From IMG/VR virus record IMGVR_UViG_3300028592_000004, positions 124,001-188,000 of that record: a DNA stretch of 64,000 nucleotides; one strand, 5' to 3'. Both the position numbers and the translations under genes were made by a program. This document shows positions 38,583-60,189 of this stretch, piece by piece. Position 1 is the stretch's first letter; every line of letters starts with the position of its first letter. The notes under the pieces were generated by a model. It saw only the letters and a list, made by a program, of their open reading frames with translations, did not search any database and had not been told where the DNA came from.

Positions 38583-38608
38583 TACGATTCCAATCCGCGG
38601 GTATTGGA

Positions 38609-39022: not shown

Positions 39023-39024
39023 CG

Positions 39025-41484
39025 TTATCCTTCCGTGGACAGGCTCAGATCGATGCGCTGGTCGGGCACCGCCTGGATGGCCTTCTGCTTGAGGAACAGG
39101 ACCAGCTCACCCGTCTGGTCGAAGGTGCTGGAAAACGCATTCTCCAGCTCGTTCATTTCGTTTTCGCCGTACCGCTCCTGGAACTTTTCCGGGTTCCAGT
39201 AGAACACGAGCAGCAGCCGGCCAATCCGGTCCATCCCCTTCATAATCGGACCGATATGCCGGTCGACCAGCTGGTCGTCGCGGGTCGACTTGAGCAGCGT
39301 CGAGATGACGCTGGTGTCGAAGACTTCCCGCTGACCGCTCTGGGCAGCCTGCTGCACGTACTGCATCATGCCCGGTTCGGGACCCTGAAGCTGGTACGCG
39401 TCCCGCGAAGCCTGATGATTCGGCTCCATTGAGTCAACGGGAAGCATGTCGGCCTGGGAACCATAGGTCGGCATGTTGCCGCCCATGACCCCGTCGAACC
39501 GGGCGTCCATCGGCGGAATGGACGGGGCGGTGACCGTCTGCTCGACCCCGTACGGGTTGGCGTACTTGATGCGGAGGTTCAGACCGCGGTGATGCAGGTT
39601 GAAGGCGACATCGGCGCGCTTCACCAGCTCGCGGGCCGTCGCTTCGCGGAGGCCGTGGTTGACGATCAGGTCGAAGCAAGCCTGCTTGGCCGGCATTCGC
39701 TGGTTGTTGATGACCGCTTCGCAGCCATCGCACCAGATCTTGAGCTGACTGGCTTGCTTCATCATCTCGAACTGGACGTCGAGCAGGTTCCCCGGGCGGA
39801 TCGGCGGCGGATCGCTTTCGCCTGTGTCGGCGCCGGCCATGCACGGGCTACAGTCCTTGCCATACTGCTCTTCCCAGGACTTCCGGTGCCGGACCTTGAT
39901 GATCTTCGTGTCGTTGGGGACGGTGACATCGCCCTTGTTCGACCGGAAGGTGATTCCCTTCTTGTCCGACAGGTGCAGGCGTTCCCCATCGGTGTACTTG
40001 TCGTAGCCCTCATGATCGTCGTAGGGCATGCCGGAGTAGTTGCGGCCGAGATTGAAGGCCGGATCTTCCTTCGAGCAGTACGAGTCGAAGTTGACTTCCC
40101 ACGACTTGCCGGCATCGGACGTTCCGAGGGACCGATCAACGGTGAACGGGAGCGTGGCGCTCCCGGTTGCGTTGATGGCGATGTACTCGCTGCGATCGCT
40201 CGACTCAGGCGACGAATCGCTCTGCTCTTCGACCCACTTCTCGAATTCCGACTTCGGGTAGTACTTCGTCGTGTAGAGATAGGAGGCGTGGATGTTGAGC
40301 CAGTTACGCTCGCTGGCACCACTCCCCGCGCGGATCACGGTCGCGAACCGCTTCCGGCCGTTGCCACTCATCGGGTGGATGATGACGACGCACTTCTCGA
40401 CGGAGCCTGGCTTGACCAGGACGTCATACAGCCCGGTCTCGGTCGGGGTCTCGAACGTTTCCTTTTCGCGAACTTCGTAGACCTTGGAGATCTCGTCGTC
40501 GTCGCGGTCGTCCACGACGAGGGAGCCCTCCGCGGCCAACTTCTCCCGCTGCTCTTCGGTGAGCAGGAGGGACGGCTGGGCGAAGTTGTTGAAGCGGTGG
40601 ATCGAAACCGAGCCCCGCTTGACGAGCCCGTCCAGCAGCGACTTCGGGTTGCCGCTCTGGGATTCTGAGCGAACGACCTTCGGCGAGGGCGGCGCGGAGC
40701 CGGTGACCTTGTATTCGCAGCCGGCGGTCTTCATCGGCGACCGCGACTTCGCCTCTTCGAACATGTCGTAGAGGGAGTCGTGCGTGTACTTGTCCCGGAC
40801 CGGGAAGCGATCGACGGACTGCTTGATGTGCGCGAAGGCGTCAGCGAACTCCTCCGGCGCGTAGAACTTGTCGAGCTGGGACTGCAGATCCGGGAACTTG
40901 TCTGCCGCCATCTTCAGGAGATCAAGCATCTCCAGACCGCCATCCTTGAGCAGCTCGGGCAGATGGACCGTCCCGTCGAGCGGATTGGAGGTGGCGTGCT
41001 TGTAGAGGCAGCCCACGGCGTCGAGCGCCCAGGGCGGCATCGCCGAGCCGTACTTCGAGGGTGACTGGGTGAACTGCGACAGGGAGGGGCGCAGCGTCTG
41101 CCGCGAGGCCTCGCCCTTGTCGATCCCGTTGCCGAGGATGATCGGCTTCTTGTTCAGGATGTAGTTGATCCAGTTCTCTTTCAGCGGCACGAACATGTCC
41201 TGGTTCTTCAGGTACAGGAGTTCGTGCCCCTTCAGGTCCCCGTCGATGAAGAACACCGGAGCGTAGAGCCACTGGGAGCCGACCTTAAACGCGAAAATCC
41301 CGACAGCGCGGGTATCATCTTCGTTCCGGTCGATGAGCTGGAAGCCGACCTCGTAGTCGAGGAGCTTCGGGGCCTTGTCCGTCAAGTAGGAGTGGGCCAG
41401 CGACGAAAATGCCTGCTCGAACGGGACGTCGTTCCCGGCTTCCGAGGCCCGCTTGATGTTCCGAGGCGTCAAAGTTTGAGGCAT
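39025..41484 (-). CDS. Large head-module protein of unknown function
   Basis: 819 aa from MPQTLT; several K-x-A motifs between globular-looking blocks. Confidence 0.65.
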   Translation of the reverse strand: MPQTLTPRNIKRASEAGNDVPFEQAFSSLAHSYLTDKAPKLLDYEVGFQLIDRNEDDTRAVGIFAFKVGSQWLYAPVFFIDGDLKGHELLYLKNQDMFVPLKENWINYILNKKPIILGNGIDKGEASRQTLRPSLSQFTQSPSKYGSAMPPWALDAVGCLYKHATSNPLDGTVHLPELLKDGGLEMLDLLKMAADKFPDLQSQLDKFYAPEEFADAFAHIKQSVDRFPVRDKYTHDSLYDMFEEAKSRSPMKTAGCEYKVTGSAPPSPKVVRSESQSGNPKSLLDGLVKRGSVSIHRFNNFAQPSLLLTEEQREKLAAEGSLVVDDRDDDEISKVYEVREKETFETPTETGLYDVLVKPGSVEKCVVIIHPMSGNGRKRFATVIRAGSGASERNWLNIHASYLYTTKYYPKSEFEKWVEEQSDSSPESSDRSEYIAINATGSATLPFTVDRSLGTSDAGKSWEVNFDSYCSKEDPAFNLGRNYSGMPYDDHEGYDKYTDGERLHLSDKKGITFRSNKGDVTVPNDTKIIKVRHRKSWEEQYGKDCSPCMAGADTGESDPPPIRPGNLLDVQFEMMKQASQLKIWCDGCEAVINNQRMPAKQACFDLIVNHGLREATARELVKRADVAFNLHHRGLNLRIKYANPYGVEQTVTAPSIPPMDARFDGVMGGNMPTYGSQADMLPVDSMEPNHQASRDAYQLQGPEPGMMQYVQQAAQSGQREVFDTSVISTLLKSTRDDQLVDRHIGPIMKGMDRIGRLLLVFYWNPEKFQERYGENEMNELENAFSSTFDQTGELVLFLKQKAIQAVPDQRIDLSLSTEG

Positions 41485-41531
41485 TGCACCCATCCGTGGT
41501 GAATTGCGTGGCGGTCCGTGCCGTGAGGCCC

Positions 41532-41559
41532 ATCGTATCAGTTCGACAACGACGGGCAA
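41532..41559 (-). promoter_or_regulatory. Sigma70-like promoter with extended -10
   Basis: TTGCCC-16 nt-TACGAT with TG at -15/-14. Confidence 0.5.
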
Positions 41560-41566
41560 ACATTCG

Positions 41567-43483
41567 TTAGAGCCCGTCCAAAACGGACGGGAGGGACTTC
41601 TTCGGTTTGAGAGGGTCGGCCTCCCAGCCCTGCGTCAGACCCTCTCGACCGAAGTTGAGGGGGTTCATCGCCATCGCCGAGGGGTAGCTCGTCCCAAAGG
41701 GATCGATCGTGTCGCCGCGGTGGACAGCCTTGAGCGTGCTCTTTTCTAGGTTCGAGCCGAGGTGCCGCGAGACAACGTCCTCGTCCTGTTCCAGGTTCGC
41801 CATTCCGCGGATCATCACCGGCGTGAACGGCGGCGGGTCGTCGTTGACGTCGATGTTCTGGATGCCAAACTCCTGCAGCTCCTTCACAACCGAGGGCCGG
41901 ATCTTCGTTCCAATCGTGTAGTGCAGGACCGGCTTCTCCAGGTACTTTCCCTTGGCACTGCCCGGGTGCATCCGGATCGTACTTGCCCGGGGTTGCCAGT
42001 TCCGTTCCAACTGCTGGTACGAGACGATGTCGTTCGGCACCCGGTCATCCAGTTCGTCGTCGAGCCGGACGTGGTTGATCAGCCCGCGTGCAAGAAGCTC
42101 GACGTTCCGGCGATGGGCGCCCATGCCCGCCTCCCGGTACGCCTGAGCAAAGGCCTTGGTGTAGTACCGCCGGCCCTCCCCGATCCCCTTGTGCTCAATG
42201 ATCTCAGCCGGGTTCGGGATCCCGTCGCTGAGGACGTCGCCAGCTTCGACTTCGTCACCCGGCTTGACCTTCACCTCGTGGCCGTGGCCGACGTAGTGGC
42301 GGTCATTGCCCACGGTGACGAAGAATCCACCCTGGGGCGCCGGGGTGACTTCGTTCACGCGGCCGTCGAGCTTCGAGATCGAAGCCCCGGACTTGAACGT
42401 CTTCGGGACCTGAACGAACTGGTCAATCAGCTTGAAGCCGGAGACAGCCTTGTCGGCACCGGCGACACCGCCGGAGTGCTTTGAGGAGAGCTGCCCCTGT
42501 GTCAGCTTTTCCGACAGGGCCTGGGCAGCGGCGAGTCCAACGAAGTCTCCCCGCCGCGGAAGGAATCCGCGTTCCCGGACGCCGACGTCGCGGCTCCAGA
42601 CGCCATCCCCGGGACCGCCGACAGTCGGCGATCGGACAAGGATTCGCTTGAAGCCCTGGTCCTGGATGTCGCGCAGCACCTTCGGCGTCAGGATCGTGTT
42701 CCGGTCGTAACCCGCGACCGGTGAGGCCAGGAAGGCGCCTTCGTTGTCGGCATCCTCTGTGTCGACCGGCAGCCCGCGGTTCCCGTGGTCGTAGTCGTCC
42801 GGATCGTCTGTCCCGACCGTCACCAGCCGGTGGTTGACCTGGTTGAGCTGCTTGGCAAGGTAGCCGGAGTCTTGCGTGGACCCCTTCGTATCGAGCACCC
42901 CTTTCCGGGCGCCGAACGTACCGGCGAAATACTCCACCGGCGACAGCCCTTCGGAGTACGACCGCAGCACAGGAATCGGAATCGGCCGGCCCTTGTGGTC
43001 GACGTACAGCAGGTCGGAGCCGCGGAGCGACTTCAGGTTCCCGGCGTTACCGCGGGCACCGGAGGCGATCTGCTGCCAGAAGGGATTGTTCTCCTCCCTG
43101 CTCTCGTCGAAGATCTTCTTCTCCATCGGCTCCCGGAAACCCATCGCCGCATCGACGATCTGTTGGGCTCGGTCGTCATCGTTCAGATCGCCCTTGGCAA
43201 GGATCTGATTGAGCTTGCCCTGAAGCTGTTGACGCATCTGCATCGCAGACGGCGAGACGAGCATGTCCTTCAGCCGGAAGGAGAAGCTGCCGGTGCTGGT
43301 CGCGGCGTCCCGTCCGATGTCGGAGAGACGCTTCGTGACCTCGCGGTACTGGTCGGGATACTTCTCCGCGAGTTCCTGGAAGACAGCGTTGAGGCCCTTC
43401 TTGTCGAAGACGGCGTTCCGACCGCGCATCCCTTCCGGCAGGGCTTGATCGATGAGTAGTCGGCCTAGCGTCGTCTTGAGCAT
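41567..43483 (-). CDS. Phage multisubunit RNA polymerase, beta' C-terminal chain
   Basis: TTLGR, SGARG, EGLSPVEYF...GARKG..DT...T.DSGYL (bridge helix), AAAQALSE..TQ..L..KH.GG (trigger loop). Confidence 0.93.
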   Translation of the reverse strand: MLKTTLGRLLIDQALPEGMRGRNAVFDKKGLNAVFQELAEKYPDQYREVTKRLSDIGRDAATSTGSFSFRLKDMLVSPSAMQMRQQLQGKLNQILAKGDLNDDDRAQQIVDAAMGFREPMEKKIFDESREENNPFWQQIASGARGNAGNLKSLRGSDLLYVDHKGRPIPIPVLRSYSEGLSPVEYFAGTFGARKGVLDTKGSTQDSGYLAKQLNQVNHRLVTVGTDDPDDYDHGNRGLPVDTEDADNEGAFLASPVAGYDRNTILTPKVLRDIQDQGFKRILVRSPTVGGPGDGVWSRDVGVRERGFLPRRGDFVGLAAAQALSEKLTQGQLSSKHSGGVAGADKAVSGFKLIDQFVQVPKTFKSGASISKLDGRVNEVTPAPQGGFFVTVGNDRHYVGHGHEVKVKPGDEVEAGDVLSDGIPNPAEIIEHKGIGEGRRYYTKAFAQAYREAGMGAHRRNVELLARGLINHVRLDDELDDRVPNDIVSYQQLERNWQPRASTIRMHPGSAKGKYLEKPVLHYTIGTKIRPSVVKELQEFGIQNIDVNDDPPPFTPVMIRGMANLEQDEDVVSRHLGSNLEKSTLKAVHRGDTIDPFGTSYPSAMAMNPLNFGREGLTQGWEADPLKPKKSLPSVLDGL

Positions 43484-43725
43484 CAGAACCCTACGTCGGA
43501 CAGCGTGGGTGCGTCACGGTGACGGATTTGCACTTCCGATCGGTTGAGGCCCAGGTTACCCAGTACCTGCTCGAACCGAGGATCTTCAAAGGTGTAGGCC
43601 TGGACCAGGCCGTCTGCGAGTTCGATCGCAACCGCCACGATGGTTCCCTGGCGGTTGCGAATCACGACGCGACGAGCTTCTGCGACCTGGGGCTCAGCCA
43701 GCTTTTGGAAAAACTCGATCTGCAT
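43483..43725 (-). CDS. Hypothetical protein
   Basis: 80 aa, AAGGAG RBS, TGATG coupling to the beta'C gene. Confidence 0.6.
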   Translation of the reverse strand: MQIEFFQKLAEPQVAEARRVVIRNRQGTIVAVAIELADGLVQAYTFEDPRFEQVLGNLGLNRSEVQIRHRDAPTLSDVGF

Positions 43726-44494
43726 TACCGAGGCTCCTTGCGAGTGCCGCCAGGTTTGCCATCGACTGGGCCGGCGTCAAGGAGGACGCGGACTTGCTGA
43801 CCGAGGAACCGATTCCCTGGTAGTCGCTCGCCGTCTTGCCGGCAGCCATTCCAGGGGCGGCACCCTGGATCGGGTCGATGGGTGGAATCGCACTGGGCTG
43901 ACCGCCTGCGGCAGCCGCCGGGTCCATCCCCGCAGCGGCCGGATCACCGGCCGGAAGAGCTCCGGCCTGATCCTGATTGGCCATCTGCATCTGCATCGGA
44001 TCGGGCGGCGGGCCGAGGGCCACGTCCGCCGGGATCGGGATCTGCATGTGGTTCATGATCTCGGCGACCATCCGCATGATCTGCCAGAGCTTCGTGTCGA
44101 GGATGGCCGGGTCGACCTTCTTCGTGGCCGGCTTGCCCATGCCGGGCATCCCGCCGGTGCCGCCCGCTCCGCCTGCTCCGCCCATCATCTGCATGGCCTG
44201 AACGACGGCCTGGACCATCGCGGGATCCGCTTGGCCCCCTCCGCCGCCCATCGGAGGCCCGGCGAGGGGATCGGCCGGCATTCCACCGCCCGGAGGCATT
44301 CCAGGGGCTCCACCCGGCGCCGGCGCTCCACCCATCGCGGCCGGATCACCACCCGGCGGCATACCCGGGGCACCGCCCGGAGGGGCTCCACCGCCAGGCG
44401 GCACGACCGACGCCTTGAAGAACGGCTGTGCCTGACCGGGGTTGTTGGCTTCGTGCTGAGCCAGCTTGAGAATCGTCGGGTTGAGCAAGCTCAT
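43694..44494 (-). CDS. Pro/Gly/Ala/Met-rich low-complexity protein with K-x-A motifs
   Basis: 266 aa between the two RNAP genes; KLA, KTA, KSA. Confidence 0.6.
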   Translation of the reverse strand: MSLLNPTILKLAQHEANNPGQAQPFFKASVVPPGGGAPPGGAPGMPPGGDPAAMGGAPAPGGAPGMPPGGGMPADPLAGPPMGGGGGQADPAMVQAVVQAMQMMGGAGGAGGTGGMPGMGKPATKKVDPAILDTKLWQIMRMVAEIMNHMQIPIPADVALGPPPDPMQMQMANQDQAGALPAGDPAAAGMDPAAAAGGQPSAIPPIDPIQGAAPGMAAGKTASDYQGIGSSVSKSASSLTPAQSMANLAALARSLGNADRVFPKAG

Positions 44495-44517
44495 CTCGGC
44501 TTCCTTGCCAGAAGTAA

Positions 44518-47500
44518 TTACCGGGGATTGATAATCTCGACGTTGTCGTCCACGCCGATCTCGCCCCGGCGGTAGGCCTGTACTGCGTCTCTCACTGTAG
44601 CGAACGTCCTAGTCCGATTCGAGGTCGGCGAAGGCTTGGACGCCCGATAGAGGCCCCCAGCATACTCCTTCCCAGGCAGCTGGTGAGCGCGGAAGTTGGA
44701 GACCGCCAGCAAATTCCGGCTGGGCAGCATCTTCTCGTAGGCATCTGCGACAGCCTCGTCGCTCTGCGGAACATGGTACTGCATCGCGTCGCCGTCGAAG
44801 TCAGCGTTGAATCCGGTGACGATCGTCGGCGAGATGTGGATCGTGTCGTCCTGGATCAGTTTCGGCCGGAACGCCATCAGGTTGTACCGGTGAAGCGTCG
44901 GTGCCCGGTTGAGCACGACCGGCCGATCTTCCATCGTCCGGAGCAGCATCGTGCGGGCGCGATCGGACCGCGACGTGACAGCTCGGGCCGCGTCCATCCG
45001 ACTCATCCCGTTGCGAACCAGTCCGCGAACGATGTGCGGCTTGTAGACCTCCCACGCCTTATCTTCCGGGATCCCCACTTCGTCCATGTCGAGATCCGGG
45101 TCTGGAATGATTGTGCCGCGACCGACCGTGTCGACCACCGAGCCGATCAGCTTCTGCTGGACGAAGCCATACTTCGGCGAACCACCGAAGATCGTCTTCA
45201 GCAGTCCCTTTACCTTGCGTTCCTGGTTCTTCGGCTGAGTCGGATCCGCCAGACCCGTGAGGGCCTTGAACGAGTTGTAGACGGCCAGGCGCTCATCACC
45301 CAGGTCGTCGAACTTGCCGGCCGCATCCTTCAGGATTCCGTTCGAATCCATGATCTCCTTGTAGAGCGCGTTGGCGTCGGCCACCATCGGTAGCTTGGAG
45401 CCCTGCATGACAGACACCGGCCGGAACACCGGCGGAATGACCGGCACCTTCGTAAGCATCCAGTCCCGCGGGTGGATCCCGTGCTGCTCCGCGCTCTTGA
45501 GGTACTTCAGCTTCCGGATGGCCTCATCCCGCCGGGTCTTCTTGCCGGACGCGATATCCGCCCGAGCGTTCTCGATCATTCGCGGGAGGTTGATCGAGTC
45601 CAGGGCGTACTTGATGGCGCTCGGCCCGGTGCGGTCGTTCAGCTTCTCGCGGCCGGCGAGGATGTCGAGGAACTTGTTCTCGGTCAGGCCGAGGACGCGA
45701 CGGATCGGTTCCTCCATGACAGGCGACGGCATCGGCTCACTGAGCTTGATGAAGCTCCACCGGTTACCGCCGTGCCCGCCGGTCAACTCTGGATCGAACA
45801 GACCGCCCTTGACCGGGTTGAGCCCGCCCTTCCAGTCGACAGTGTCGGAATTGGTGATCTCGCGGTTGCCAGCGAACTCGTCGATGTCGGCGTCGCGGAG
45901 GGCCAGGGTGTTGAACCGTGTCCCGTTCCGCACCACGTTGATCCCGGAGCCGCGGAGCGTATCCACGAACTTCTTGTAGACCATCGGGACCTTCGGCATC
46001 GGCGGAGCGTGACCGCTCATGTACTGCGTCCAGTACTCCGGATGCTGCTGTCCGCGCACGACGGCAGCGTCACGCAGGAACTCCGTGGCTCCGTGGCTCA
46101 GGAGGGCGTTGGCATCCAGGAGACTCACCCGCTTGCTTCCGGTCTGACCACCCTTCGCCGGCAGCCCCTCGCTGGTGTAGCCGCCCATGCTCCGACCCTG
46201 GCCCTTCGACTCGGCCGTGTGGTGGAGCTTCATGAAGTAGCGGTTGCCGGTGAAGATCCCCGGGATCTTCCGGTTGTTCGAACTCGGGTCGATCAGGTCT
46301 TCGGTGTCGGACAGACCATTCTTCTGCAGCTCCTGCATAGCGTACTGCACAAGGTCCGGGATGTCCTTGAAGTCCTTGACGTTGTAGTGCTTGCCGGTCA
46401 TCGCGGCGATCTTGCCAAGCGTCGCCTCAACCACCTGGGCGGGGTTGGTGCGGGTGATGATCCCCAGCGGGTTGGCGAGCACTTCGTACGGCTTACCGTC
46501 TGCACCGACAGGCATCTGGCTGTCGGGGATGATCTTCGCGATGACGCCCTTGTCCCCGTAGCGGCCGGAGATCTTGTCGCCGGTCTGGGCCTGCATCACG
46601 CTCTTGACGGTGACCACGATCCCCTTGTCCGTCTTGGCGACGTCGACAACCTCTCCGGGAGAGTGGTGGTCCCAGGTCTCCGTCTGGTCAGAGAAGGACC
46701 GATCCCGGGCCTTGTGAAGTGAGTTCTTGGCCCGCTCCTTCTGCTTGGCGCCGAGGATGATCGGGTCATCCGGCTGCAGGATCGTTCCCGGCTTGACCAC
46801 GCCATCGTCATCGATCGAGTCCAGCACCTTCCGCGGGTACTTGCTCGGGAACATGCTGATGAAGTCCCGCTTCTTCGTCCGGATGTTGTCGTCCAGGTCC
46901 AGCCCGTGCTGGTACATGTGCTGACTGCTCAGCCGCTTGGCGAAGGACTCGCTGATGGCGAAGGCATCCTCAAAGTTGATCCCCTTCCAGGCGATGTAGG
47001 CCGTCCGGGCATTCCGGCCGAGGGCCACGACTCCGTTCTTGTCGGTGTAGTTCGAGTGGGCGAGGAGCTGTCCCTGACCAACGCGATCCCCGGGCTTCAC
47101 AACGGCGGTGTTGTGGAGGTAGGTCTTTCGGTTCGAGGGGTCGTGATTCCAGAGCTCGACGACTTCCTTCTTGCCGTCCGGCGTCTGAATCGTGATCTCG
47201 TCGTTGTCGACGTGGGTGACCGTCCCGTCGACCTTGCTGCGGGATGCCCCGAACATCTCGCCGTACCGGTTCTCAAAGCTGTCGTCGACGTCCTCCGGCA
47301 CGCCGGTGCGGACAAACGGAGCTTCCCCGTCGTCGAGCGAGAGGGCCTGCGTCAGCATTCGCTGGGCCATCGCCGCCCGCTGCCCCTTCATGGCCGACTT
47401 CATGGGGACCATCGTCACCATCGGAGAGAGTGTGCTCTCCATGTTCGGCACTTCGAAGTCAACCTTGTCGCGCGGCACGAACTTCATCTTGCCGCCGACG

Positions 47501-48978
47501 AGCGCCGGGACCTGGTCCTTGTAGGTCGCCATCGCGTTCGGGAAGGCGAGGACAGCCTTGGTGATCTCCTGCGGTGACTTGAAGACGGTCTGGCCGGTCC
47601 GCGCGTCCCGGAAGGGAGCGTACATACGGCCGTCCTTCCCCTTCTCCGCAGCGTAGGCGAAGCGGGAGTCGACACCGGCCTTGAGCGATTCAGGCGTGAC
47701 CAGGCTGTCGATGAAGCCGAACTGTCCAGGCTGGACGCTCCGCGCTTCGTCGGGCACCGAGTCGACGCTCGGGATCCCGCCCTCACCCAGCCGGCTGACG
47801 CGGTACATCTGCTCAATGAGCATCCCCGGGTTGATCTCTTCCCCGGGGTTCCCCAGACCGCTGTCGGTGATGGCGCTGAGCAGGCCGCTCGTCAGGATCC
47901 CGGACGGGATATGGTCCAGGTTCTTGCGGATGGTGCCCTTCCACAGCATCCGGCGGAGCATGTTCTTGTCTCGACCGAAACGCTCTGCGAGGAGATCTTC
48001 GGGGCCGAGGAGCGTCTGGAAGGCCGGGTTGTCGCGGTCGTCCGTCTCGTCTTCGCCCTTGTTGATCGCCAGCAGCTTGCGGGTGGCCGCGAGCCACGTC
48101 GGGGCGTCGACCTTGTCGAATGCCTCGCGAAGGGTCTCCTTGTTGACCTCCGGATCGAGCTTCATCTTCCGGAAGGCTTCAGCAACGGCCTGCCCGCGCA
48201 GTCCCTCGTCCGGTTCGTTGCCGCGGACCAGCCGCCGGTAGAGCTTGTCGACCGCGCCGCGATCGTTCTTCGCCATGTTGGCGGCAGCCAGCTCGGGTCC
48301 CCACGCTTCGTTCAGCTGGGACGGCGTGACACCCATTGCCCGCAGGACCGGCCACATGGGGATCTCACCTTGGGCGATCTTGAGTTTGAAGATCCCGGAC
48401 TCCGGATCCATCATCACCCGATGCGCGAGCCCCTGGCCGGGGAGCACGTTGATGTGGGACTCCAGCTCGCCGCTCTCCTTCTGGCGGGAGAACGCTCCGG
48501 ACATGAGGCGAAGCTGGTGGCCAAGCGAGTAGCGGTTCCCGCTGAGGATGAAGGCCCCGCGGTCCCCAAAGTAGGGGACGTTCGCGATTGTAGCCCGCCG
48601 TTCGGAGATCGGCTGCTGCGTGGCCAGGTCGACCAGGCGCCAGGTCCCTTTCAGCTTCCGGGACAGCGTCTTCCCGGTGAGGATGGCGTTCTTCTGGTCC
48701 TTCTTCGAGTACCGTTCCGGCCCCTCGTACGCCGGGTCGACCAGCTCCAGCCGGTGCGTCTTGCTCTCGACCGGCTGGAACTTCATCGCGGAGTTCAGCA
48801 CGTTGTCGAAGATCGACTGCCGGATGGCTGTGACGTCCCCGAAGCCTCGACGTCCGGTCGGCTGAGCGAGCGGCGGAGGAGACCAGGGAGCGGGCGCCGG
48901 AGGGGTGCCCATTTGTGAATCCAGCCCCTGCAGCAGAGGCGAGGGGCTGGGGAGAAGGCCGTCCATGAAGTCAGGCAT
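44518..48978 (-). CDS. Phage multisubunit RNA polymerase, beta + beta' N-terminal fusion (catalytic chain)
   Basis: beta motifs NFEDA, GDKISGRYGDKGVI, NPLG..TR.N..Q, YFMKLHH; beta' motifs GLFD, VPVIPP..RP, LNRAPTLHR, NADFDGD (44788-44808). Confidence 0.97.
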   Translation of the reverse strand: MPDFMDGLLPSPSPLLQGLDSQMGTPPAPAPWSPPPLAQPTGRRGFGDVTAIRQSIFDNVLNSAMKFQPVESKTHRLELVDPAYEGPERYSKKDQKNAILTGKTLSRKLKGTWRLVDLATQQPISERRATIANVPYFGDRGAFILSGNRYSLGHQLRLMSGAFSRQKESGELESHINVLPGQGLAHRVMMDPESGIFKLKIAQGEIPMWPVLRAMGVTPSQLNEAWGPELAAANMAKNDRGAVDKLYRRLVRGNEPDEGLRGQAVAEAFRKMKLDPEVNKETLREAFDKVDAPTWLAATRKLLAINKGEDETDDRDNPAFQTLLGPEDLLAERFGRDKNMLRRMLWKGTIRKNLDHIPSGILTSGLLSAITDSGLGNPGEEINPGMLIEQMYRVSRLGEGGIPSVDSVPDEARSVQPGQFGFIDSLVTPESLKAGVDSRFAYAAEKGKDGRMYAPFRDARTGQTVFKSPQEITKAVLAFPNAMATYKDQVPALVGGKMKFVPRDKVDFEVPNMESTLSPMVTMVPMKSAMKGQRAAMAQRMLTQALSLDDGEAPFVRTGVPEDVDDSFENRYGEMFGASRSKVDGTVTHVDNDEITIQTPDGKKEVVELWNHDPSNRKTYLHNTAVVKPGDRVGQGQLLAHSNYTDKNGVVALGRNARTAYIAWKGINFEDAFAISESFAKRLSSQHMYQHGLDLDDNIRTKKRDFISMFPSKYPRKVLDSIDDDGVVKPGTILQPDDPIILGAKQKERAKNSLHKARDRSFSDQTETWDHHSPGEVVDVAKTDKGIVVTVKSVMQAQTGDKISGRYGDKGVIAKIIPDSQMPVGADGKPYEVLANPLGIITRTNPAQVVEATLGKIAAMTGKHYNVKDFKDIPDLVQYAMQELQKNGLSDTEDLIDPSSNNRKIPGIFTGNRYFMKLHHTAESKGQGRSMGGYTSEGLPAKGGQTGSKRVSLLDANALLSHGATEFLRDAAVVRGQQHPEYWTQYMSGHAPPMPKVPMVYKKFVDTLRGSGINVVRNGTRFNTLALRDADIDEFAGNREITNSDTVDWKGGLNPVKGGLFDPELTGGHGGNRWSFIKLSEPMPSPVMEEPIRRVLGLTENKFLDILAGREKLNDRTGPSAIKYALDSINLPRMIENARADIASGKKTRRDEAIRKLKYLKSAEQHGIHPRDWMLTKVPVIPPVFRPVSVMQGSKLPMVADANALYKEIMDSNGILKDAAGKFDDLGDERLAVYNSFKALTGLADPTQPKNQERKVKGLLKTIFGGSPKYGFVQQKLIGSVVDTVGRGTIIPDPDLDMDEVGIPEDKAWEVYKPHIVRGLVRNGMSRMDAARAVTSRSDRARTMLLRTMEDRPVVLNRAPTLHRYNLMAFRPKLIQDDTIHISPTIVTGFNADFDGDAMQYHVPQSDEAVADAYEKMLPSRNLLAVSNFRAHQLPGKEYAGGLYRASKPSPTSNRTRTFATVRDAVQAYRRGEIGVDDNVEIINPR

Positions 48979-48979
48979 G

Positions 48980-50059
48980 TTACGTTGGCGTCGTCATTCC
49001 GGAGAGATCGGTCTGGGAGAACCCACCCTGGTTCTGCTGCAGCCGCATTTGCATCGACTGCTGCATCTGCATCTTCCGCTGGTTCATCCGCTGGAGAGCG
49101 GACGAAGCGGCTTGGCTCGCGGAGACTCCCTTCGGCCGCACATTCGACTTGGCCGAAGGGAGCGCGGCAATCTTCTCTTCTTCGGGCGGCATGAGCGTCG
49201 CCGTCGTCGGAATCGCGGGCTTCTTCGGGGCCGGCGGCATGTGGTAGGGGACCGGCATCGCGATCACCGGCCGCGGGCTGCTGTCGTACAGCTGACGGTT
49301 CCGGCGACGGACGGCCTCGTTCAGGGCATCCCCTTCGCTACGGCTCCGTGCCCAGTTGTAGGTCGCGAGCCCGGCCCCGCCGGCCAGCATCGCGTTCAGC
49401 AGGCCCAGCATGCCCAGACCCTTGTTGATGATCGCACGCTTCTCGTACACGAAGTCGAGATCATCACTGGCCTGCTTACCAAGGTGCTGGGCGTTGAGAG
49501 CCTGTTCGTACTCGTTCCGGGCCGCTGCCAGCTCGCTGTCGACTTCGTTCTTCCGTGCGGAATCGAACAGGGAGTCGGTCAGCTTGTAGCCGCCATAGAG
49601 CCCGCCGCCAAGGGCTGCGGCGCTTGCTGGCCAGGCCCAGGGAATGTCGGAGAACGTCGCGGCGTTGTCGCCCATAAGCCGGCCCATGAGCGGGCCTCGC
49701 ATCTGCTCGACGCCGTTCACGACGGGAGCGAAGACGCCGGACATGTGGCCGAGGTTCTCAGCGATCCCCGAGAGCAGGCCCGGCTTGGCCGGTGCCGCCG
49801 GGGCAGCGGCGAGCTTCTCTTCCTCGGGCTGCCGGCGGACCGGCATACGAATCGGAAGAACAACCGTGCGGTTCGGAATCTTCGGCGGAGAGGTTGTGTT
49901 CCGGTCGAAGAGGTTGAGAGCTCCGCTGGCTCCGCGGAGAGCCATCCCCGCGCCGGCGCTCAGCAAACCCATCTGGAGGAGCTGCTCAATCGATCGAGCT
50001 TTCAGCTGGTTCGTCGCCCCCGGGACGGAGTAGGGGGTCGGCATCATATTCGTCGGCAT
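48980..50059 (-). CDS. Glycine-zipper internal virion / ejection protein (putative)
   Basis: Three Gly/Ala hydrophobic segments separated by KLA, KQA, KRA, KIA; no Cys. Confidence 0.55.
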   Translation of the reverse strand: MPTNMMPTPYSVPGATNQLKARSIEQLLQMGLLSAGAGMALRGASGALNLFDRNTTSPPKIPNRTVVLPIRMPVRRQPEEEKLAAAPAAPAKPGLLSGIAENLGHMSGVFAPVVNGVEQMRGPLMGRLMGDNAATFSDIPWAWPASAAALGGGLYGGYKLTDSLFDSARKNEVDSELAAARNEYEQALNAQHLGKQASDDLDFVYEKRAIINKGLGMLGLLNAMLAGGAGLATYNWARSRSEGDALNEAVRRRNRQLYDSSPRPVIAMPVPYHMPPAPKKPAIPTTATLMPPEEEKIAALPSAKSNVRPKGVSASQAASSALQRMNQRKMQMQQSMQMRLQQNQGGFSQTDLSGMTTPT

Positions 50060-50068
50060 CCATGCACC

Positions 50069-50422: not shown

Positions 50423-50432
50423 GAGGTGCCTT

Positions 50433-50816: not shown

Positions 50817-50817
50817 C

Positions 50818-51216: not shown

Positions 51217-51232
51217 GACAGCAATCCTTTGC

Positions 51233-52135: not shown

Positions 52136-52139
52136 CGCA

Positions 52140-52153
52140 AGTCCTCCGTGACT
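52140..52153 (-). promoter_or_regulatory. CsrA/RsmA-type hairpin at RBS
   Basis: AGTC-ACGGAG-GACT. Confidence 0.6.
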
Positions 52154-52190
52154 GAGAAACATCCCTGTGGTCGCACTGTATCGACCGAGA

Positions 52191-54343: not shown

Positions 54344-54356
54344 CCATGTCCTCCCG

Positions 54357-55179: not shown

Positions 55180-55220
55180 GAGAGGCTCCGAGAACAGTCC
55201 GTTGTCGTCGGGTTGCTGGC

Positions 55221-57157: not shown

Positions 57158-59512
57158 TCAGTCGAAGGCGGCGCTGATGGCACCGGTCAACAACCCGCCC
57201 CAGAGGCCCGCTTGCTGCAGGCCCACCTGGGCCTCGGGATTGAGGCCCGCTAGGGCTCCCATTGTTTTACCCAGAAGCAACCCACCGAGAAATCCCCCAG
57301 CCCCGCTGAAGGCAACGGTCTTGGCGATGTCGAAAGGCGAAACGGAGGGCTTTCCACCGCTCCCCAGCGAGGCGGCGACGAGCGTACCGCTCGCGGCTGC
57401 AGCGACTTGCGCTGGCGTGCCACCGAAGTTCGAGCCGGGCCGTGCGGCGTCATTCCAGATCACACTCCCGAAGGCGTCGACGGGGATATTCGACAGGAAC
57501 ATTGTCCCCGTCATGTCCTCCGCGGCGTTGGTTTTCGTCCGACCGGACCAGCCGAAGTCGTCGGCCGGCATCTCGGAACCCATCCCAGACAGGTTCGAGT
57601 TCCACCCGTGCGGCGTCTTGAGACCCCAGTACAAACCCGGAGCAGCGCCCAGGCCGGCGCCCAGGAGCCCCAGCGTGCGTCGCATCCGCTTGCCGGAGAA
57701 GTACTGCTCCGGAAGCATGTTGTCCATCAGATAGCCGGCACCGTAGCCCAGGCCGGCTCCCAGAGCTCCACCAACCAGCGTGCTGGAGAGCGGGCTCGGC
57801 CCACCGAGCGGCTTGTTGACCTTCGACCACATGTCCGAAATCCCCTCGAACATCGCGCCCTGCTTGAACATCGTCCAGCCCGGCTCGTCGGCCGGGATCG
57901 TACTGACCAGGCCCTTCTCCGGATGGACGAACCAGCAGCCCTCTGCCTCCGCATACTTCACGACCAGCGGCGCCGCCTGCTCGTACAGAGCTCGCACCCG
58001 GGCGGGGACTTCCCGCCAACTGAGGTGTTCCAGCTCGTCGATCGCGCTCGCTTCCTTCTGGTTGCGCTGTCCGATCTCCTTCAACAGATCCCGGAACTTC
58101 ATGTTGATCTCTTCCTTCTGCTCGGCCAGACGCCGCAGGTGATAGTCCGCTCCAGACCGATCATCGGTCAGGCCGAGGAACCGTTCCAGAGAGGATGGCT
58201 CCCGAGGGCGGGACAGGAAGTTCTGGATGAGGACGTTCCGCTGGTCTGTCGGAAGGTAGCCGTGACTATCGTGACGGATCCCGCGGCCTTTGACCTGAGT
58301 ATCGCGAGCCTCGTTCCAGTGCGGATCCAGGATCTGCATCAGCCGAGTGCCACGGAGCGAGATCCCTTCCGAGCCGGCGGGACCGGCGAGCAGCACCGGA
58401 GCCAACCCGTTGTTGTAGCTCTCAATAATCCGCTTCCGCTCCAGGTCGGCGATACCGCCGTGGAAGAGGCCGTAGGGGATCTTGTCTCGCTCCAGGGCCG
58501 CGGCGTAGGGACGGAGGCCGGCGTCAATGAAGTTCGAGTAGACGAGCGCTCGGCTCTTCGGGTTCTTCGCCATCTGCTCCTTGAGGAGCTTATAGGCCAG
58601 CTGCAGCTTGGGCGAGGAATCGAACGCGGCCAACGGGTCCGGGTTCGACATGAACGGGAACATCGACAGCCCGATCTGTCGCGGTCCGGTCAGGAAGGAC
58701 GTCATCCGCTTCCGTTCGAGGGCGGAGAGCGGGAAGTTGTTCTGCAGCTTGTAGCGCAGGACCCAGGGGATCGAGTTCCAGAACGACCGATACGCGGTCG
58801 TCTGCTCGTCCGACATGTCAACTTCGTGCATCTCGTCTGTGCGATCCACGAGCGGCTTATCGGGAGCGTGGTAGTCGACGTGGCCCGCCAGCAGATCTTC
58901 CAGCCGGCCGACGTTCTTCGGCTCCATCACCTGGCCGGGCGTGACACCGAACAACGAGGCGAAGAAACCCGGGCGAACCGTCTTCTGCTTGATGAACTGG
59001 TGTGTGAACGCGTCCGGCGTGATCCGCTCGCCGGTCAGGATCGACATCGGCGCCGCGAGATCGGACGGGTGATTGACGATCGGCGAGCCCGAGAGGAGGT
59101 AAACGTGCTTGGCCTTGTTCGCCAGGTCCGTCACTGCCTGCGTCCGCTGAGACTCAGGGTTCCGGATCCGGTGAGCCTCATCGACGATCAGAGTGTCCGC
59201 GGCCGGGGCCTTGCCCGCCGTCGCGCCCTCGTAGGACACAACGTTGCCCATCAGCGAGCCGTCAGTGAACTTGGCCTGCTCCTTCGCAAAGTTGGGACGC
59301 AGTGCCGCTGGCACGATAGCCGTGTACGGCTTGCCGGCGTTCTCTGCCGCAGCGATCGAGGCCAGAGTCTTCCCGCTCCCCACGTCGTGGAAGAGGAGCA
59401 TGCGGGACTCTTCGTCCTTCCCGGTCTGGGCGATCCGCTTCTGTTGAGGCTGCAGCTCGACGCCCGGCAGGAGGGCCGCGATCTTCAACTGGTCAACGAA
59501 GTCGGCGTCCAT
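57158..59512 (-). CDS. SF2 (SNF2-like) helicase/translocase fused to a C-terminal glycine-zipper region
   Basis: GSGKT, DEAH, SGSP, EGISL, Q..GRGIR; C-terminal GGALGAGLGYGAG and similar segments. Confidence 0.85.
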   Translation of the reverse strand: MDADFVDQLKIAALLPGVELQPQQKRIAQTGKDEESRMLLFHDVGSGKTLASIAAAENAGKPYTAIVPAALRPNFAKEQAKFTDGSLMGNVVSYEGATAGKAPAADTLIVDEAHRIRNPESQRTQAVTDLANKAKHVYLLSGSPIVNHPSDLAAPMSILTGERITPDAFTHQFIKQKTVRPGFFASLFGVTPGQVMEPKNVGRLEDLLAGHVDYHAPDKPLVDRTDEMHEVDMSDEQTTAYRSFWNSIPWVLRYKLQNNFPLSALERKRMTSFLTGPRQIGLSMFPFMSNPDPLAAFDSSPKLQLAYKLLKEQMAKNPKSRALVYSNFIDAGLRPYAAALERDKIPYGLFHGGIADLERKRIIESYNNGLAPVLLAGPAGSEGISLRGTRLMQILDPHWNEARDTQVKGRGIRHDSHGYLPTDQRNVLIQNFLSRPREPSSLERFLGLTDDRSGADYHLRRLAEQKEEINMKFRDLLKEIGQRNQKEASAIDELEHLSWREVPARVRALYEQAAPLVVKYAEAEGCWFVHPEKGLVSTIPADEPGWTMFKQGAMFEGISDMWSKVNKPLGGPSPLSSTLVGGALGAGLGYGAGYLMDNMLPEQYFSGKRMRRTLGLLGAGLGAAPGLYWGLKTPHGWNSNLSGMGSEMPADDFGWSGRTKTNAAEDMTGTMFLSNIPVDAFGSVIWNDAARPGSNFGGTPAQVAAAASGTLVAASLGSGGKPSVSPFDIAKTVAFSGAGGFLGGLLLGKTMGALAGLNPEAQVGLQQAGLWGGLLTGAISAAFD

Positions 59513-60189
59513 GCCAGCACCCTCTCCAGCTCCATCAGAGGCTTGGCCGAGGACGTTTTCTCCGCGGCCCAAATGCAACTCGGACAGTCGTGGTCGACGA
59601 CGTGCCGCTCATTGTGGGAGCAGCGACACCGGGTCTCGTGCCCGCACTTATGTTGAAAGATCCCGTGCGCTGACGCTGCCTTCGCGACGTCGCTGTTCTC
59701 CTGCAGGATCTTCTTCTTCCGGACCGCGCAGGTGATGTGGAAATCGTACTCGTTGTTCTTGGGGCGTGCTGACAGCCCGTATGACTTGCGAAGTTTCTCC
59801 AGATCCGGAGACTTCACTTTCAGGAACCAGACCCGCGACATTTCCTTCCAGCTCGTTGGCGCGACCTCTTGCAGCGCCCCAAGCTGGTAGTGGAACTCCC
59901 TTCCCCGCTCGACGATGACGTCGATGCCGCCAATCTGCTCGATCTCTTCCGGACGCATGACGCTGATATGCGCATTCAGCGGTTCATTGTTGTGTGGCCC
60001 GGGCAATTCTGCGCCAAGGACCCGCATCGCCGAGAAGACACCCCTGACTAGATCATTCGGGACTGTCAGCAACAGCCATCCACTCTGAGACGCAATCAGC
60101 CGGCCCGCCAAAACGGGGGCATCGACCGCGTCACCCGCGGACTTCAAGAGGTAGCCGGACGCTTCGCCTAGTTGAAAGTCTGACGTCAC
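59485..60189 (-). CDS. 2H phosphoesterase family protein with C-terminal Cys/His cluster
   Basis: Two HxS/T motifs (AHISV, FHITC) about 80 aa apart; GTG start after GAGGA. Confidence 0.75.
   Translation of the reverse strand: MTSDFQLGEASGYLLKSAGDAVDAPVLAGRLIASQSGWLLLTVPNDLVRGVFSAMRVLGAELPGPHNNEPLNAHISVMRPEEIEQIGGIDVIVERGREFHYQLGALQEVAPTSWKEMSRVWFLKVKSPDLEKLRKSYGLSARPKNNEYDFHITCAVRKKKILQENSDVAKAASAHGIFQHKCGHETRCRCSHNERHVVDHDCPSCIWAAEKTSSAKPLMELERVLAWTPTSLTS

What the first reader, a model, noticed from the sequence alone, without database searches (positions are those of the whole stretch)
41567..48978. Two-chain bacterial-type RNAP: beta fused to beta'N, separate beta'C, both Zn sites lost
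Seen: one 1486-aa chain runs from a shortened beta directly into beta' and through NADFDGD. The rest of beta' starts at TTLGR in a gene two ORFs downstream. The beta' N-terminal zinc-binding domain is reduced to GGHGGNRW, and the second zinc site reads VRSPTVGGPGDGVWSRDVG with no Cys. No alpha or omega gene is recognisable in the window. Established: phiKZ/AR9 RNAPs are split into four or more divergent chains and crAss-like RNAPs are single chains. This enzyme keeps motifs close to cellular RpoB/RpoC with a different split. Its position in the head module suggests a virion enzyme.
Basis: partly seen in the sequence, partly recalled or inferred. Interest (0 to 1): 0.82.

Follow-up and report, generated by a model that had tools for sequence, protein, structure and literature searches.

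The report
Two-chain, cysteine-free phage RNA polymerase
A roughly 229-kb tailed phage encodes its own bacterial-type RNA polymerase in two chains (beta fused to the first half of beta', plus the second half), with no zinc sites and no cysteine, and it belongs to a large, sequenced but unstudied family that also carries its own sigma factor and a helicase partner.

Summary
Window 44518-48978 (-) is one 1486-aa chain: beta (about aa 56-1020) fused without a linker to beta' as far as about 90 aa past NADFDGD. Window 41567-43483 (-) is the rest of beta', starting at TTLGR, with two small ORFs in between. The beta' zinc-binding domain is deleted, the four ligands of the second zinc site are gone, and both chains (2124 aa) have no cysteine.

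The architecture is not unique. Salmonella phage Arash (gp206/gp216), three Vibrio phages and at least 150 metagenomic clusters, on contigs of about 200 kb, share it. The family forms one clade outside 80 sampled bacterial RpoC sequences. Loss of the first zinc domain is family-wide. Loss of the second site and of all cysteines is specific to the window's clade.

- A true sigma-70-family gene (9353-10102) sits in the baseplate module.
- An SNF2 helicase (57158-59578) is fused to the beta' C-terminal chain in one relative.

In Arash virion preparations the orthologues of both chains, the sigma and the helicase are all abundant.

Best reading: a self-contained core, sigma and ATPase transcription machine, packaged in the virion and ejected with the DNA. 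It is a new variant of phage multisubunit RNA polymerase that is sequenced but has not been biochemically characterised.

The parts
44518..48978 (-). Chain 1 of the RNA polymerase (1486 aa). It has a Pro-rich N-terminal extension (about aa 1-45), beta (about aa 56-1020, nt 45919-48813) and the N-terminal part of beta' (about aa 1021-1486, nt 44521-45918) through NADFDGD. It has no cysteine.
   Evidence: Pfam Rpb2_6 plus Rpb1_1/Rpb1_2 in one chain. PDB phmmer: aa 56-1010 match cyanobacterial beta and aa 1118-1476 match cyanobacterial gamma. Catalytic NFED, GDK..GDKG and NADFDGD are conserved. The start is supported by the MPxxLD N-termini of homologues.
45757..45780 (-). Scar of the deleted beta' zinc-binding domain (GGHGGNRW). 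About 32 residues holding C70/C72/C85/C88 are missing.
   Evidence: Alignment with Salmonella RpoC and 12 family members. The deletion is present in all of them, including Arash and Vibrio D69.
43694..44494 (-). 266-aa Ala/Gly/Pro-rich, Met-rich, cysteine-free protein between the two polymerase genes. Function unknown; possibly an internal virion protein.
   Evidence: No Pfam or PHROG hit. Orthologues lie at the same position in L007, L008 and L091.
43483..43725 (-). 80-aa cysteine-free protein. Its stop codon overlaps the start of chain 2 by one base. Function unknown.
   Evidence: A protein of 76-81 aa keeps this position in L007, L008 and L091. No family hit.
41567..43483 (-). Chain 2 of the RNA polymerase (638 aa): the C-terminal part of beta' from TTLGR (about E. 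coli residue 568) to the end. It has a bridge helix and a trigger loop. The second zinc site is replaced (nt 42581-42637) and an acidic insert replaces the C814 loop (nt 42782-42808). It has no cysteine.
   Evidence: Pfam Rpb1_5. PDB phmmer: aa 2-492 match C. difficile beta' 577-1097. Alignment. AlphaFold2 model pLDDT 77.7; Foldseek top hits are bacterial beta' chains, TMq up to 0.72.
9353..10102 (-). Sigma-70-family factor (249 aa, cysteine-free) in the baseplate module. It is the likely specificity subunit of the phage polymerase.
   Evidence: Homologue of Arash gp10 (blastp 4e-8, syntenic). A family profile hits only sigma factors in PDB (SigA E 9e-13, regions 2-4). All 12 members hit Pfam Sigma70_r3. 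For the AlphaFold2 model (pLDDT 80), all top 50 Foldseek hits are sigma factors.
57158..59578 (-). SNF2-family ATPase/helicase (806 aa, one cysteine). It is a likely polymerase-associated motor. The adjacent ORF 59485-60324 carries a 2H-SAK phosphoesterase domain.
   Evidence: Pfam SNF2-rel_dom plus Helicase_C. 33% identical to Arash gp217, which lies directly after beta'C gp216. 43% identical (E 7e-99) to the SNF2 part of P0257, a 1774-aa beta'C-NUDIX-SNF2 fusion found on 11 contigs.
48980..50059 (-). 359-aa cysteine-free, Met-rich protein directly upstream of chain 1. Its position is conserved in relatives. Function unknown.
   Evidence: ORFs of 375, 381 and 286 aa hold the same position in L005, L007 and L008. 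No family or fold lead.
39025..41559 (-). 844-aa protein directly downstream of chain 2. Its position is conserved. It is weakly related to virion 'structural proteins' of Arash and Vibrio D69.
   Evidence: ORFs of 800-852 aa lie downstream of beta'C in L007, L008 and L091. Weak blast matches to Arash gp218 and D69 gene 266. The Atlas search was uninformative.

Best explanation
The window comes from a jumbo myovirus of about 229 kb that encodes its own bacterial-type RNA polymerase core in two polypeptides.

Shown
- Beta is tethered head-to-tail to the catalytic N-terminal half of beta'. The same junction is fused naturally in Helicobacter.
- The C-terminal half of beta' (bridge helix, trigger loop, jaw/clamp end) is a separate chain.
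- All catalytic motifs are intact.
- The zinc-binding domain is deleted, the second zinc site is replaced, and no cysteine is left in either chain.
- A real sigma-70-family gene and an SNF2 ATPase gene belong to the same conserved gene set.

Inferred
- The beta-beta' tether replaces the alpha-dimer scaffold, so the core assembles without alpha or omega.
- The core is made late together with virion proteins. It is packaged in the head with the sigma factor and the SNF2 ATPase and ejected with the DNA.
- As a sigma-dependent holoenzyme it starts early transcription independently of the host.
- The absence of zinc and cysteine suits an enzyme that sits in an extracellular, oxidising particle and may have to pass partly unfolded through the tail.
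- Because Arash has one polymerase set and two sigma genes, the same core probably serves later gene classes with another sigma.
- The rifampicin pocket is substituted at classical resistance positions, so the enzyme is probably insensitive to the drug.

Confidence by part: that this is a phage-encoded, catalytically intact two-chain bacterial-type core is about 0.95. That it is packaged, ejected and works with the phage sigma and SNF2 ATPase is about 0.5-0.6.
For: Architecture and motifs
-.

Family and synteny
- Arash gp206/gp216 and Vibrio D69 have the same fusion and split.
- The gene order is conserved in L007, L008 and L091.
- In a tree the family is one clade (SH-aLRT 95), apart from 80 bacterial RpoC sequences of many phyla.

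Sigma factor
-.

SNF2 link
- The gene is adjacent to beta'C in Arash.
- It is fused to beta'C in P0257, which occurs on 11 contigs.

Virion association
- In Arash sucrose-gradient virions gp206 has the top spectral count (3516). gp216 has 1210, sigma gp10 467 and helicase gp217 1148 (PMC10585845).
- My own division of those counts by protein length gives similar values of about 2.0-2.4 for all four.
- The window's polymerase genes lie inside one tightly packed, co-oriented block with the capsid, sheath and baseplate genes.

Cysteine
- Cysteine count is 0 of 2124 residues, against 0.68% in the window's proteins.
- 103 of 120 homologues of chain 1 and 71 of 150 representatives of chain 2 also have none.

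Other points
- Arash and the Vibrio phages each have a single match to chain 1.
- Rifampicin pocket: Q513N, F514P, D516E, H526Q.
- The Helicobacter rpoB-rpoC fusion is documented (PMC1557499, PMC9696931).
Against: - There is no experimental data for this phage or its clade.
- The Arash preparation listed 116 'virion' proteins, including ribonucleotide reductase, primase and ligases. Its authors themselves allow carry-over of abundant infection proteins.
- Arash and D69 keep the second zinc site and a few cysteines. Freedom from cysteine is therefore not required for whatever those enzymes do.
- Only 64 kb of about 229 kb was seen. An alpha- or omega-like gene, a second polymerase set or further sigma factors could lie elsewhere.
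- The sigma factor could act on the host polymerase instead.
- The sigma-binding clamp helices and flap tip are present but shortened and divergent.
- No promoter motif was found.
Confidence: 0.6

Rival explanations
1. The enzyme is not packaged. It is made after infection only for middle or late transcription, like phiKZ nvRNAP. The phage sigma factor redirects the host polymerase for early genes.
For: The Arash proteome contains many clearly non-structural enzymes, so detection there is weak proof of packaging. Jumbo phages without their own polymerase commonly carry sigma factors for the host enzyme (PMC7598289).
Against: The polymerase genes lie in the virion-gene block rather than with the replication genes. 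gp206 is the most abundant protein by spectra in gradient-purified particles, and gp216, sigma gp10 and helicase gp217 track it. The sigma orthologue lies among tail and baseplate genes in both phages. Total loss of cysteine and zinc is hard to explain for a purely cytoplasmic enzyme.
Confidence: 0.2
2. The two phage chains are only the catalytic part. The active enzyme is a hybrid that borrows host alpha2 and omega (and perhaps host sigma), like a normal bacterial core.
For: The sequence is closer to bacterial beta and beta' than to other phage polymerase families. No phage substitute for alpha was identified.
Against: Characterised phage multisubunit polymerases work without alpha, omega or host subunits (PMC13282480). 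The covalent beta-beta' tether removes the main assembly role of alpha; this is an inference from the Helicobacter fusion. A packaged enzyme would have to carry host proteins along. The family lies on very long branches outside all sampled bacteria, so host-specific alpha contacts would have to be kept across very different hosts such as Salmonella, Vibrio and unknown high-GC hosts.
Confidence: 0.15
3. The fusion, or the missing cysteines, is an artefact: an assembly or gene-calling error, or a decaying gene.
For: None beyond the oddity of the sequence.
Against: The same single ORF occurs in a finished isolate genome with 100% peptide coverage and in hundreds of independent contigs. All catalytic motifs are intact. 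GC3 is 0.83-0.86, like the neighbouring genes.
Confidence: 0.01

Closest known systems
Salmonella phage Arash gp206 + gp216 (OQ632216), and Vibrio phages D69/D148/D181
   Same: Beta is fused to the N-terminal part of beta' in one ORF of about 1525 aa. The separate C-terminal beta' chain of about 606 aa starts at the same position. The zinc-binding domain is deleted. A sigma gene sits near the baseplate genes, and an SNF2-type helicase is linked. There is one polymerase set per genome.
   Different: Identity is only 32% (chain 1) and 26-28% (chain 2), and they form a separate deep subclade. They keep the four cysteines of the second zinc site. They have AADYDGD instead of NADFDGD. They lack the Pro-rich N-terminal extension. 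The genes between the two chains are not conserved. The published work gives annotation and a virion proteome only; the architecture is not discussed.
Bacterial RNA polymerase core (alpha2-beta-beta'-omega)
   Same: The two double-psi beta-barrel active-site motifs, bridge helix, trigger loop, clamp helices, flap and overall beta and beta' folds are shared. It has a sigma-70-family partner.
   Different: Beta and beta' are tethered and beta' is split at about residue 555/568. Both zinc sites are absent and there is no cysteine. No alpha or omega gene was seen. Scores are far below every NCBIfam rpoB/rpoC cut-off (326 bits against 5372). It lies outside the clade of 80 bacterial RpoC sequences.
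Helicobacter/Wolinella fused rpoB-rpoC
   Same: The C-terminus of beta is joined directly to the N-terminus of beta' in one polypeptide. The best NCBIfam hit of chain 1 is that fusion model.
   Different: There the whole beta' is in the fusion (about 2900 aa), the zinc sites are kept and alpha/omega are used. Here the chain stops about 90 residues after NADFDGD.
Cyanobacterial and plastid split beta' (gamma/RpoC1 + beta'/RpoC2)
   Same: Beta' is cut in the same inter-domain stretch after the catalytic barrel. Chain 1 aligns to gamma 189-552 of 625, and chain 2 residue 22 aligns to RpoC2 residue 4.
   Different: The cut is about 20 residues (chain 2 side) to about 70 residues (chain 1 side) earlier than the cyanobacterial one. 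Beta is not fused in cyanobacteria, and the zinc sites are kept there.
phiKZ/AR9-type virion and non-virion RNA polymerases (Chimalliviridae, PBS1-like phages)
   Same: They are phage-encoded relatives of beta and beta' and need no alpha or omega. One set is packaged and injected, and beta' is split after the catalytic barrel. An SF2/SNF2-type helicase is genomically linked to the polymerase genes (PMC7598289, PMC7824862, PMC13282480).
   Different: Those enzymes have 4-5 chains with beta split as well, and two paralogous sets per genome. They have no sequence-recognisable sigma. Other phage 'RNA polymerase beta subunit' PHROG families score only 20-96 bits, against 175-193 bits for the best two.
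Other bacterial-type phage polymerases seen here: YerA41 (beta'N, beta'C, beta as three genes) and Rhizobium phage RHph_Y65 (full-length beta')
   Same: They are phage-borne and recognisably bacterial-type. YerA41 also splits beta' after the catalytic barrel.
   Different: YerA41 has three chains in the order beta'N-beta'C-beta, its split is about 50-90 residues further downstream, and it keeps the cysteines of the second zinc site. RHph_Y65 has an unsplit, unfused beta' of 1127 aa.

Membership tests
Two-barrel multisubunit RNA polymerase, bacterial type (beta/beta') | Beta barrel with the two active-site lysines (GDK...GNKG) and the NFED loop | tested here: met
   GDKISGRYGDKG at aa 800-811 and NFED at aa 668-671 align with RpoB 1063-1074 and 811-814.
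Two-barrel multisubunit RNA polymerase, bacterial type (beta/beta') | Beta' barrel with NADFDGD, plus bridge helix and trigger loop | tested here: met
   NADFDGD is at aa 1391-1397. The bridge-helix stretch GARKG...SGYL and the trigger-loop histidine are aligned in chain 2. The chain 2 model matches solved beta' with TMq up to 0.72.
Two-barrel multisubunit RNA polymerase, bacterial type (beta/beta') | Beta' zinc-binding domain (C70, C72, C85, C88) | tested here: not met
   About 32 residues are deleted in the window and in every family member aligned.
Two-barrel multisubunit RNA polymerase, bacterial type (beta/beta') | Second beta' zinc site (C814, C888, C895, C898) | tested here: not met
   All four ligands are replaced in the window, L007 and L008. 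They are retained in Arash and D69.
Two-barrel multisubunit RNA polymerase, bacterial type (beta/beta') | Curated equivalog score for rpoB/rpoC | tested here: not met
   The best NCBIfam scores are 326, 242 and 212 bits, against cut-offs of 5372, 896 and 963.
Two-barrel multisubunit RNA polymerase, bacterial type (beta/beta') | Alpha dimer and omega as assembly partners | tested here: inconclusive
   No alpha or omega Pfam family was found in about 50 window ORFs. Only 64 of about 229 kb was seen, and use of host subunits cannot be tested here.
Arash-type two-chain phage RNA polymerase (beta-beta'N fusion + beta'C) | Beta and the N-terminal part of beta' in one ORF, beta'C separate, same cut site | tested here: met
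   The chain ends and starts coincide with Arash gp206/gp216 and D69 in alignments. Coverage is 92-95%.
Arash-type two-chain phage RNA polymerase (beta-beta'N fusion + beta'C) | Common descent (one clade apart from cellular RpoC) | tested here: met
   The family's 11 rows form one clade (SH-aLRT 95). The 80 bacterial rows form another (96). Branches are long, so the placement is approximate.
phiKZ/AR9-type phage RNA polymerases | Beta also split, 4-5 chains, two paralogous sets, no recognisable sigma | tested here: not met
   Beta is entire and fused. Related isolate genomes have a single match. A sigma-70-family gene is present.
Sigma-70 family (for ORF 9353-10102) | Domains sigma2, sigma3 and sigma4 in order | tested here: met
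   Profile-to-PDB matches cover SigA 192-373 and RpoS 80-225. Foldseek gives only sigma factors over 225-286 columns. The window protein alone is below the Pfam and NCBIfam cut-offs (21 bits against 25.3; 36.9 against 234).
Virion (packaged and ejected) RNA polymerase | Protein present in purified particles and active on entry | not testable with these tools
   The only data are orthologue data: Arash gp206, gp216, gp10 and gp217 are abundant in sucrose-gradient virions, in a list that also holds non-structural enzymes.
Virion (packaged and ejected) RNA polymerase | Genes embedded in the virion (late) gene block | tested here: met
   There is one co-oriented, tightly packed run from 50861 down past the capsid (30400-31338), sheath (21421-24207) and baseplate J (6820-8469) genes. 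The order is the same in Arash.

The most novel reading that the evidence does not exclude
This family would be the first example of a complete bacterial-style holoenzyme carried inside phage particles. It would consist of a zinc-free, cysteine-free two-chain core, a true sigma-70-family factor and an SNF2 motor. The complex would be ejected through the tail. It would assemble and work without alpha or omega, and the same core would be re-programmed by further phage sigma factors for later genes. The phage would then be transcriptionally independent of its host in a way different from phiKZ, N4 or crAss-like phages.
Probability: 0.35. Interest if true: 0.8.

Novelty: new variant of a known kind. 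Interest (0 to 1): 0.62.

Why it matters
Three reviews of jumbo-phage transcription (2020, 2021, 2026) were searched by keyword, and none of the passages found mentions this type. They describe only phiKZ/AR9-type enzymes, which have four or five chains, no recognisable sigma and two sets per genome. They treat phage sigma factors as a mark of phages that lack their own polymerase.

This family combines both features, is abundant in metagenomes and has a culturable member (Arash).

If the model holds, it offers three things:
- A minimal bacterial-type polymerase that folds without zinc, cysteine, alpha or omega. That would be useful for asking what those parts are for.
- A new route to host-independent early transcription.
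- A natural test of whether ejected enzymes are selected to be free of cysteine.

Tried and rejected
- Near-identical DNA search of 30000-52000 against phage records found no match.
- Sigma-70-type promoter and terminator scans of 38000-57500 gave no more sites than shuffles. Reading the intergenic regions gave no shared promoter motif.
- ESM Atlas searches for the 359-aa and 844-aa neighbours were uninformative, with low-confidence models and no family.
- The 266-aa and 80-aa ORFs were considered as alpha- or omega-like subunits. They have no family hits. The first is low-complexity Ala/Gly/Pro-rich and neither is conserved in Arash or D69, so they are not filed as subunits. Their structures were not modelled.
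- I tested whether the long C-terminal extensions of chain 2 in relatives correspond to the window's neighbouring genes (266, 80, 359, 844, 137 and 334 aa). There was no similarity.
- Looking for a portal by comparison with Arash gp204 gave no match in the window.
- A scan of 185,579 species genomes found no family member among the best 80 hits.
It was re-run without them.
- tRNA scan: none in the window.

Full report
**What is there**

Almost all genes of the 63%-GC window lie on the minus strand.
- ORF 44518-48978 (1486 aa) carries Pfam Rpb2_6 at aa 581-935, and Rpb1_1 and Rpb1_2 at aa 1156-1416.
- Against solved structures, aa 56-1010 align with cyanobacterial beta (residues 29-1049 of 1100). 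Residues 1118-1476 align with cyanobacterial gamma (189-552 of 625).
- ORF 41567-43483 (638 aa) carries Rpb1_5. It aligns from residue 2 with C. difficile beta' 577-1097.
- Two ORFs of 266 and 80 aa lie between them.

The quoted motifs are all present. NADFDGD is at aa 1391-1397, GGHGGNRW at aa 1067-1074, TTLGR at aa 4-8 of chain 2, and VRSPTVGGPGDGVWSRDVG at aa 283-301 of chain 2.

**Anatomy**

- Beta runs to its normal C-terminus at about aa 1020. Beta' follows directly from about its residue 17, so there is no linker.
- The beta segments missing relative to Salmonella/E. coli are mainly about 217-419 (in pieces) and 938-1049. Beta is therefore about the size of a minimal bacterial beta and is not truly truncated.
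- NFED, GDK..GDKG, the bridge helix and the trigger-loop histidine are conserved.
- Chain 1 ends at about E. coli beta' residue 555 and chain 2 starts at about 568.
- The cyanobacterial gamma/beta' cut is about 20 residues further on the chain 2 side. The YerA41 cut is about 50-90 residues further.
- An AlphaFold2 model of chain 2 (pLDDT 77.7) superposes on solved bacterial beta' chains over its whole length (TMq up to 0.72). Confidence is good across the former zinc site.

**Zinc and cysteine**

- The zinc-binding domain (C70/C72/C85/C88) is removed by a deletion of about 32 residues. This holds in the window, eight further members of its clade, Arash and Vibrio D69.
- The second site (C814/C888/C895/C898) is lost in the window and in L007 and L008. 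C888, C895 and C898 become G, W and D, and an acidic insert replaces the C814 loop.
- Arash gp216 and D69 keep exactly those four cysteines.
- Neither window chain has any cysteine, 0 of 2124 residues. The window's proteins average 0.68%, which gives P of about 6e-7. The part of Salmonella RpoB/RpoC that was compared has 22 cysteines.
- 103 of 120 chain 1 homologues also have none. Most of the cysteine-bearing chain 2 representatives that were inspected carry an intein-like insert.

**Not unique**

- tblastn against phage records finds four genomes with at least 80% coverage: Salmonella phage Arash and Vibrio phages D69, D148 and D181.
- Arash gp206 (1525 aa) and gp216 (606 aa), and D69 genes 261 and 264, have the same fusion and the same cut.
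- The large protein collection holds hundreds of fused homologues at 53-59% identity, on contigs up to 190-225 kb.
- The top 150 representatives for chain 2, clustered at 50% identity, are all family members.
- The window's own sigma protein occurs on a 229,285-bp contig, so this is a jumbo phage.
- The local gene order is kept in L007, L008 and L091: chain 1, a 242-266-aa Ala/Gly/Pro-rich protein, a protein of about 80 aa, chain 2, and a protein of about 800-850 aa.

**Relationship to cellular and other phage enzymes**

- A scan of species genomes returned ordinary RpoC at 30-35% identity from many phyla. No family member was among the best 80 hits.
- In a tree of the catalytic beta' region, the family is one clade (SH-aLRT 95) with two deep subclades: Arash plus D69, and the window's clade. 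All 80 bacterial sequences form another clade (96). Branches are very long, so this shows only that there was no recent capture from a sampled phylum.
- NCBIfam scores are far below all rpoB/rpoC cut-offs. The best model is the Helicobacter-type beta/beta' fusion.
- PHROGs has no dedicated family for this architecture.
- Other phages show other layouts. YerA41 has beta'N, beta'C and beta as three genes. RHph_Y65 has a full-length beta'.

Sigma factor
- ORF 9353-10102 (249 aa, no cysteine) is a homologue of Arash gp10. It lies in the same position relative to the baseplate genes.
- A profile of it and its homologues hits only sigma factors in the PDB (best E 9e-13, regions 2-4). All 12 members hit Sigma70_r3. 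For its model (pLDDT 80), all top 50 fold matches are sigma factors.

SNF2 helicase
- ORF 57158-59578 is an SNF2-family ATPase, 33% identical to Arash gp217. That gene directly follows beta'C gp216.
- In one relative the beta'C chain is fused to NUDIX and SNF2 domains (P0257, 1774 aa, the same protein on 11 contigs). Its SNF2 part is 43% identical to the window's helicase.
- That fusion, the adjacency in Arash and co-detection in Arash particles argue that the ATPase works with the polymerase. An SF2 helicase linked to polymerase genes was also noted for phiKZ-group phages (PMC7824862).

**Virion question**

- The Arash paper purified particles on a sucrose gradient. Gp206 was the protein with most spectra (3516). 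Gp216 had 1210, sigma Gp10 467 and helicase Gp217 1148.
- The authors suggest either a role at the start of infection or carry-over of abundant proteins. Their list of 116 proteins includes clearly non-structural enzymes.
- Spectra divided by length give about 2.0-2.4 for all four proteins. This is my own arithmetic and is not a stoichiometry.
- In the window the polymerase genes are part of one co-oriented, nearly gap-free run that continues into the capsid, sheath and baseplate genes. That fits an enzyme made late for packaging.
- The complete lack of cysteine and zinc fits an enzyme stored outside the cell. This is inference only.

**Mechanism proposed**

Shown:
- The core is a catalytically intact two-chain bacterial-type polymerase with a tethered beta-beta' junction.
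- A sigma-70-family gene and an SNF2 gene belong to the same conserved gene set.

Inferred:
- The tether, as in Helicobacter, substitutes for the alpha scaffold.
- Core, sigma and ATPase are packaged and ejected, and they start early transcription.
- The drug pocket substitutions Q513N, F514P, D516E and H526Q make the enzyme insensitive to rifampicin.
- Arash has one polymerase set but two sigma genes, gp10 and gp196. This suggests one core re-programmed by different sigma factors.

**Novelty**

Keyword searches of reviews from 2020, 2021 and 2026 turned up no passage describing a phage polymerase of this layout, or one paired with a true sigma factor. Four further literature searches found none either. 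However, the genes are deposited, annotated as beta and beta' subunits, and detected by proteomics in Arash. I therefore rate it as a new, uncharacterised variant of phage multisubunit polymerase. The window holds one more, zinc- and cysteine-free, member of an abundant family.

Noticed in passing
window 8916-10102, 12990-16406, 35371-37603, 41567-50059, 93-1967: The cysteine-free proteins cluster. They include both polymerase chains, the sigma factor, the 80-, 266- and 359-aa neighbours, a 1138-aa Met-rich protein (probably a tape-measure-like protein), ORFs of 146, 321 and 429 aa, and the collagen-repeat fibre. Most other window proteins have 1-11 cysteines. This may mark internal or ejected virion proteins.
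   Followed up: partly
P0135-P0284 (relatives of window 41567-43483): Many relatives' beta'C chains are 950-2250 aa long. Some have one to three intein-like inserts at about residues 199/210 and 333. Others carry long cysteine-free C-terminal extensions that are Ala/Gly/Pro-rich or hold DUF5661/DUF4269 modules. The window's chain has neither.
   Followed up: partly
L091 6001-11325 (protein P0257): A 1774-aa fusion of beta'C with a NUDIX domain and an SNF2 helicase, found as the identical protein on 11 contigs.
   Followed up: yes
window 48844-48978 (aa 1-45 of chain 1): A Pro-rich N-terminal extension of variable length begins with a conserved MPxxLD/G motif. It is present in most of the clade members aligned and absent in Arash and D69. 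It could be a packaging or processing signal.
   Followed up: partly
window 42782-42808: An acidic insert (DDPDDYDHG here, runs of D/E in L007 and L008) replaces the loop that carries zinc ligand C814 in bacteria. Its role is unknown.
   Followed up: no
window 57158-60324: The 2H-SAK phosphoesterase ORF (59485-60324) and the SNF2 ORF (57158-59578) overlap by 94 nt in different frames. In relatives L005 and L007, 2H-SAK, LigD_N and SNF2 are in one gene of 1715-2057 aa. This may be a split gene, a frameshift or a wrong start.
   Followed up: no
window 60802-61605; 28278-29531; 61624-63962: There is a caspase-like peptidase C14 gene. Several glycosyltransferase and methyltransferase genes also occur, one of them (GT2 plus a methyltransferase domain) in the middle of the structural block next to the capsid gene.
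   Followed up: no
window 51233-52204: A trypsin-like serine protease (weak Pfam and PHROG hits) lies upstream of the polymerase genes. It could be a prohead or ejected protease.
   Followed up: no
window 52191-55220: The gene calls here are unresolved. ORFs 52191-53474 and 53357-54442 overlap, and the stretch 54443-55220 has no assigned minus-strand gene. No portal or terminase was recognised anywhere in the window.
   Followed up: no
window 30321-30399, 29532-29611, 21320-21420, 20694-20806: GC-rich hairpins followed by T-runs (intrinsic-terminator-like on the minus strand) lie in intergenic gaps around the capsid, sheath and neighbouring genes. This signal type is used by bacterial-type polymerases.
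   Followed up: no
L010 (Yersinia phage YerA41) and L009 (Rhizobium phage RHph_Y65): Further layouts of bacterial-type polymerase occur in phages. YerA41 has beta'N, beta'C and beta as three adjacent genes. RHph_Y65 has an unsplit beta' of 1127 aa.
   Followed up: partly
PDB entry 9m7y chain B: A 'gp79-dependent RNAP promoter open complex' released in 2025 appeared among the fold matches of chain 2. I did not find out which system it is.
   Followed up: no
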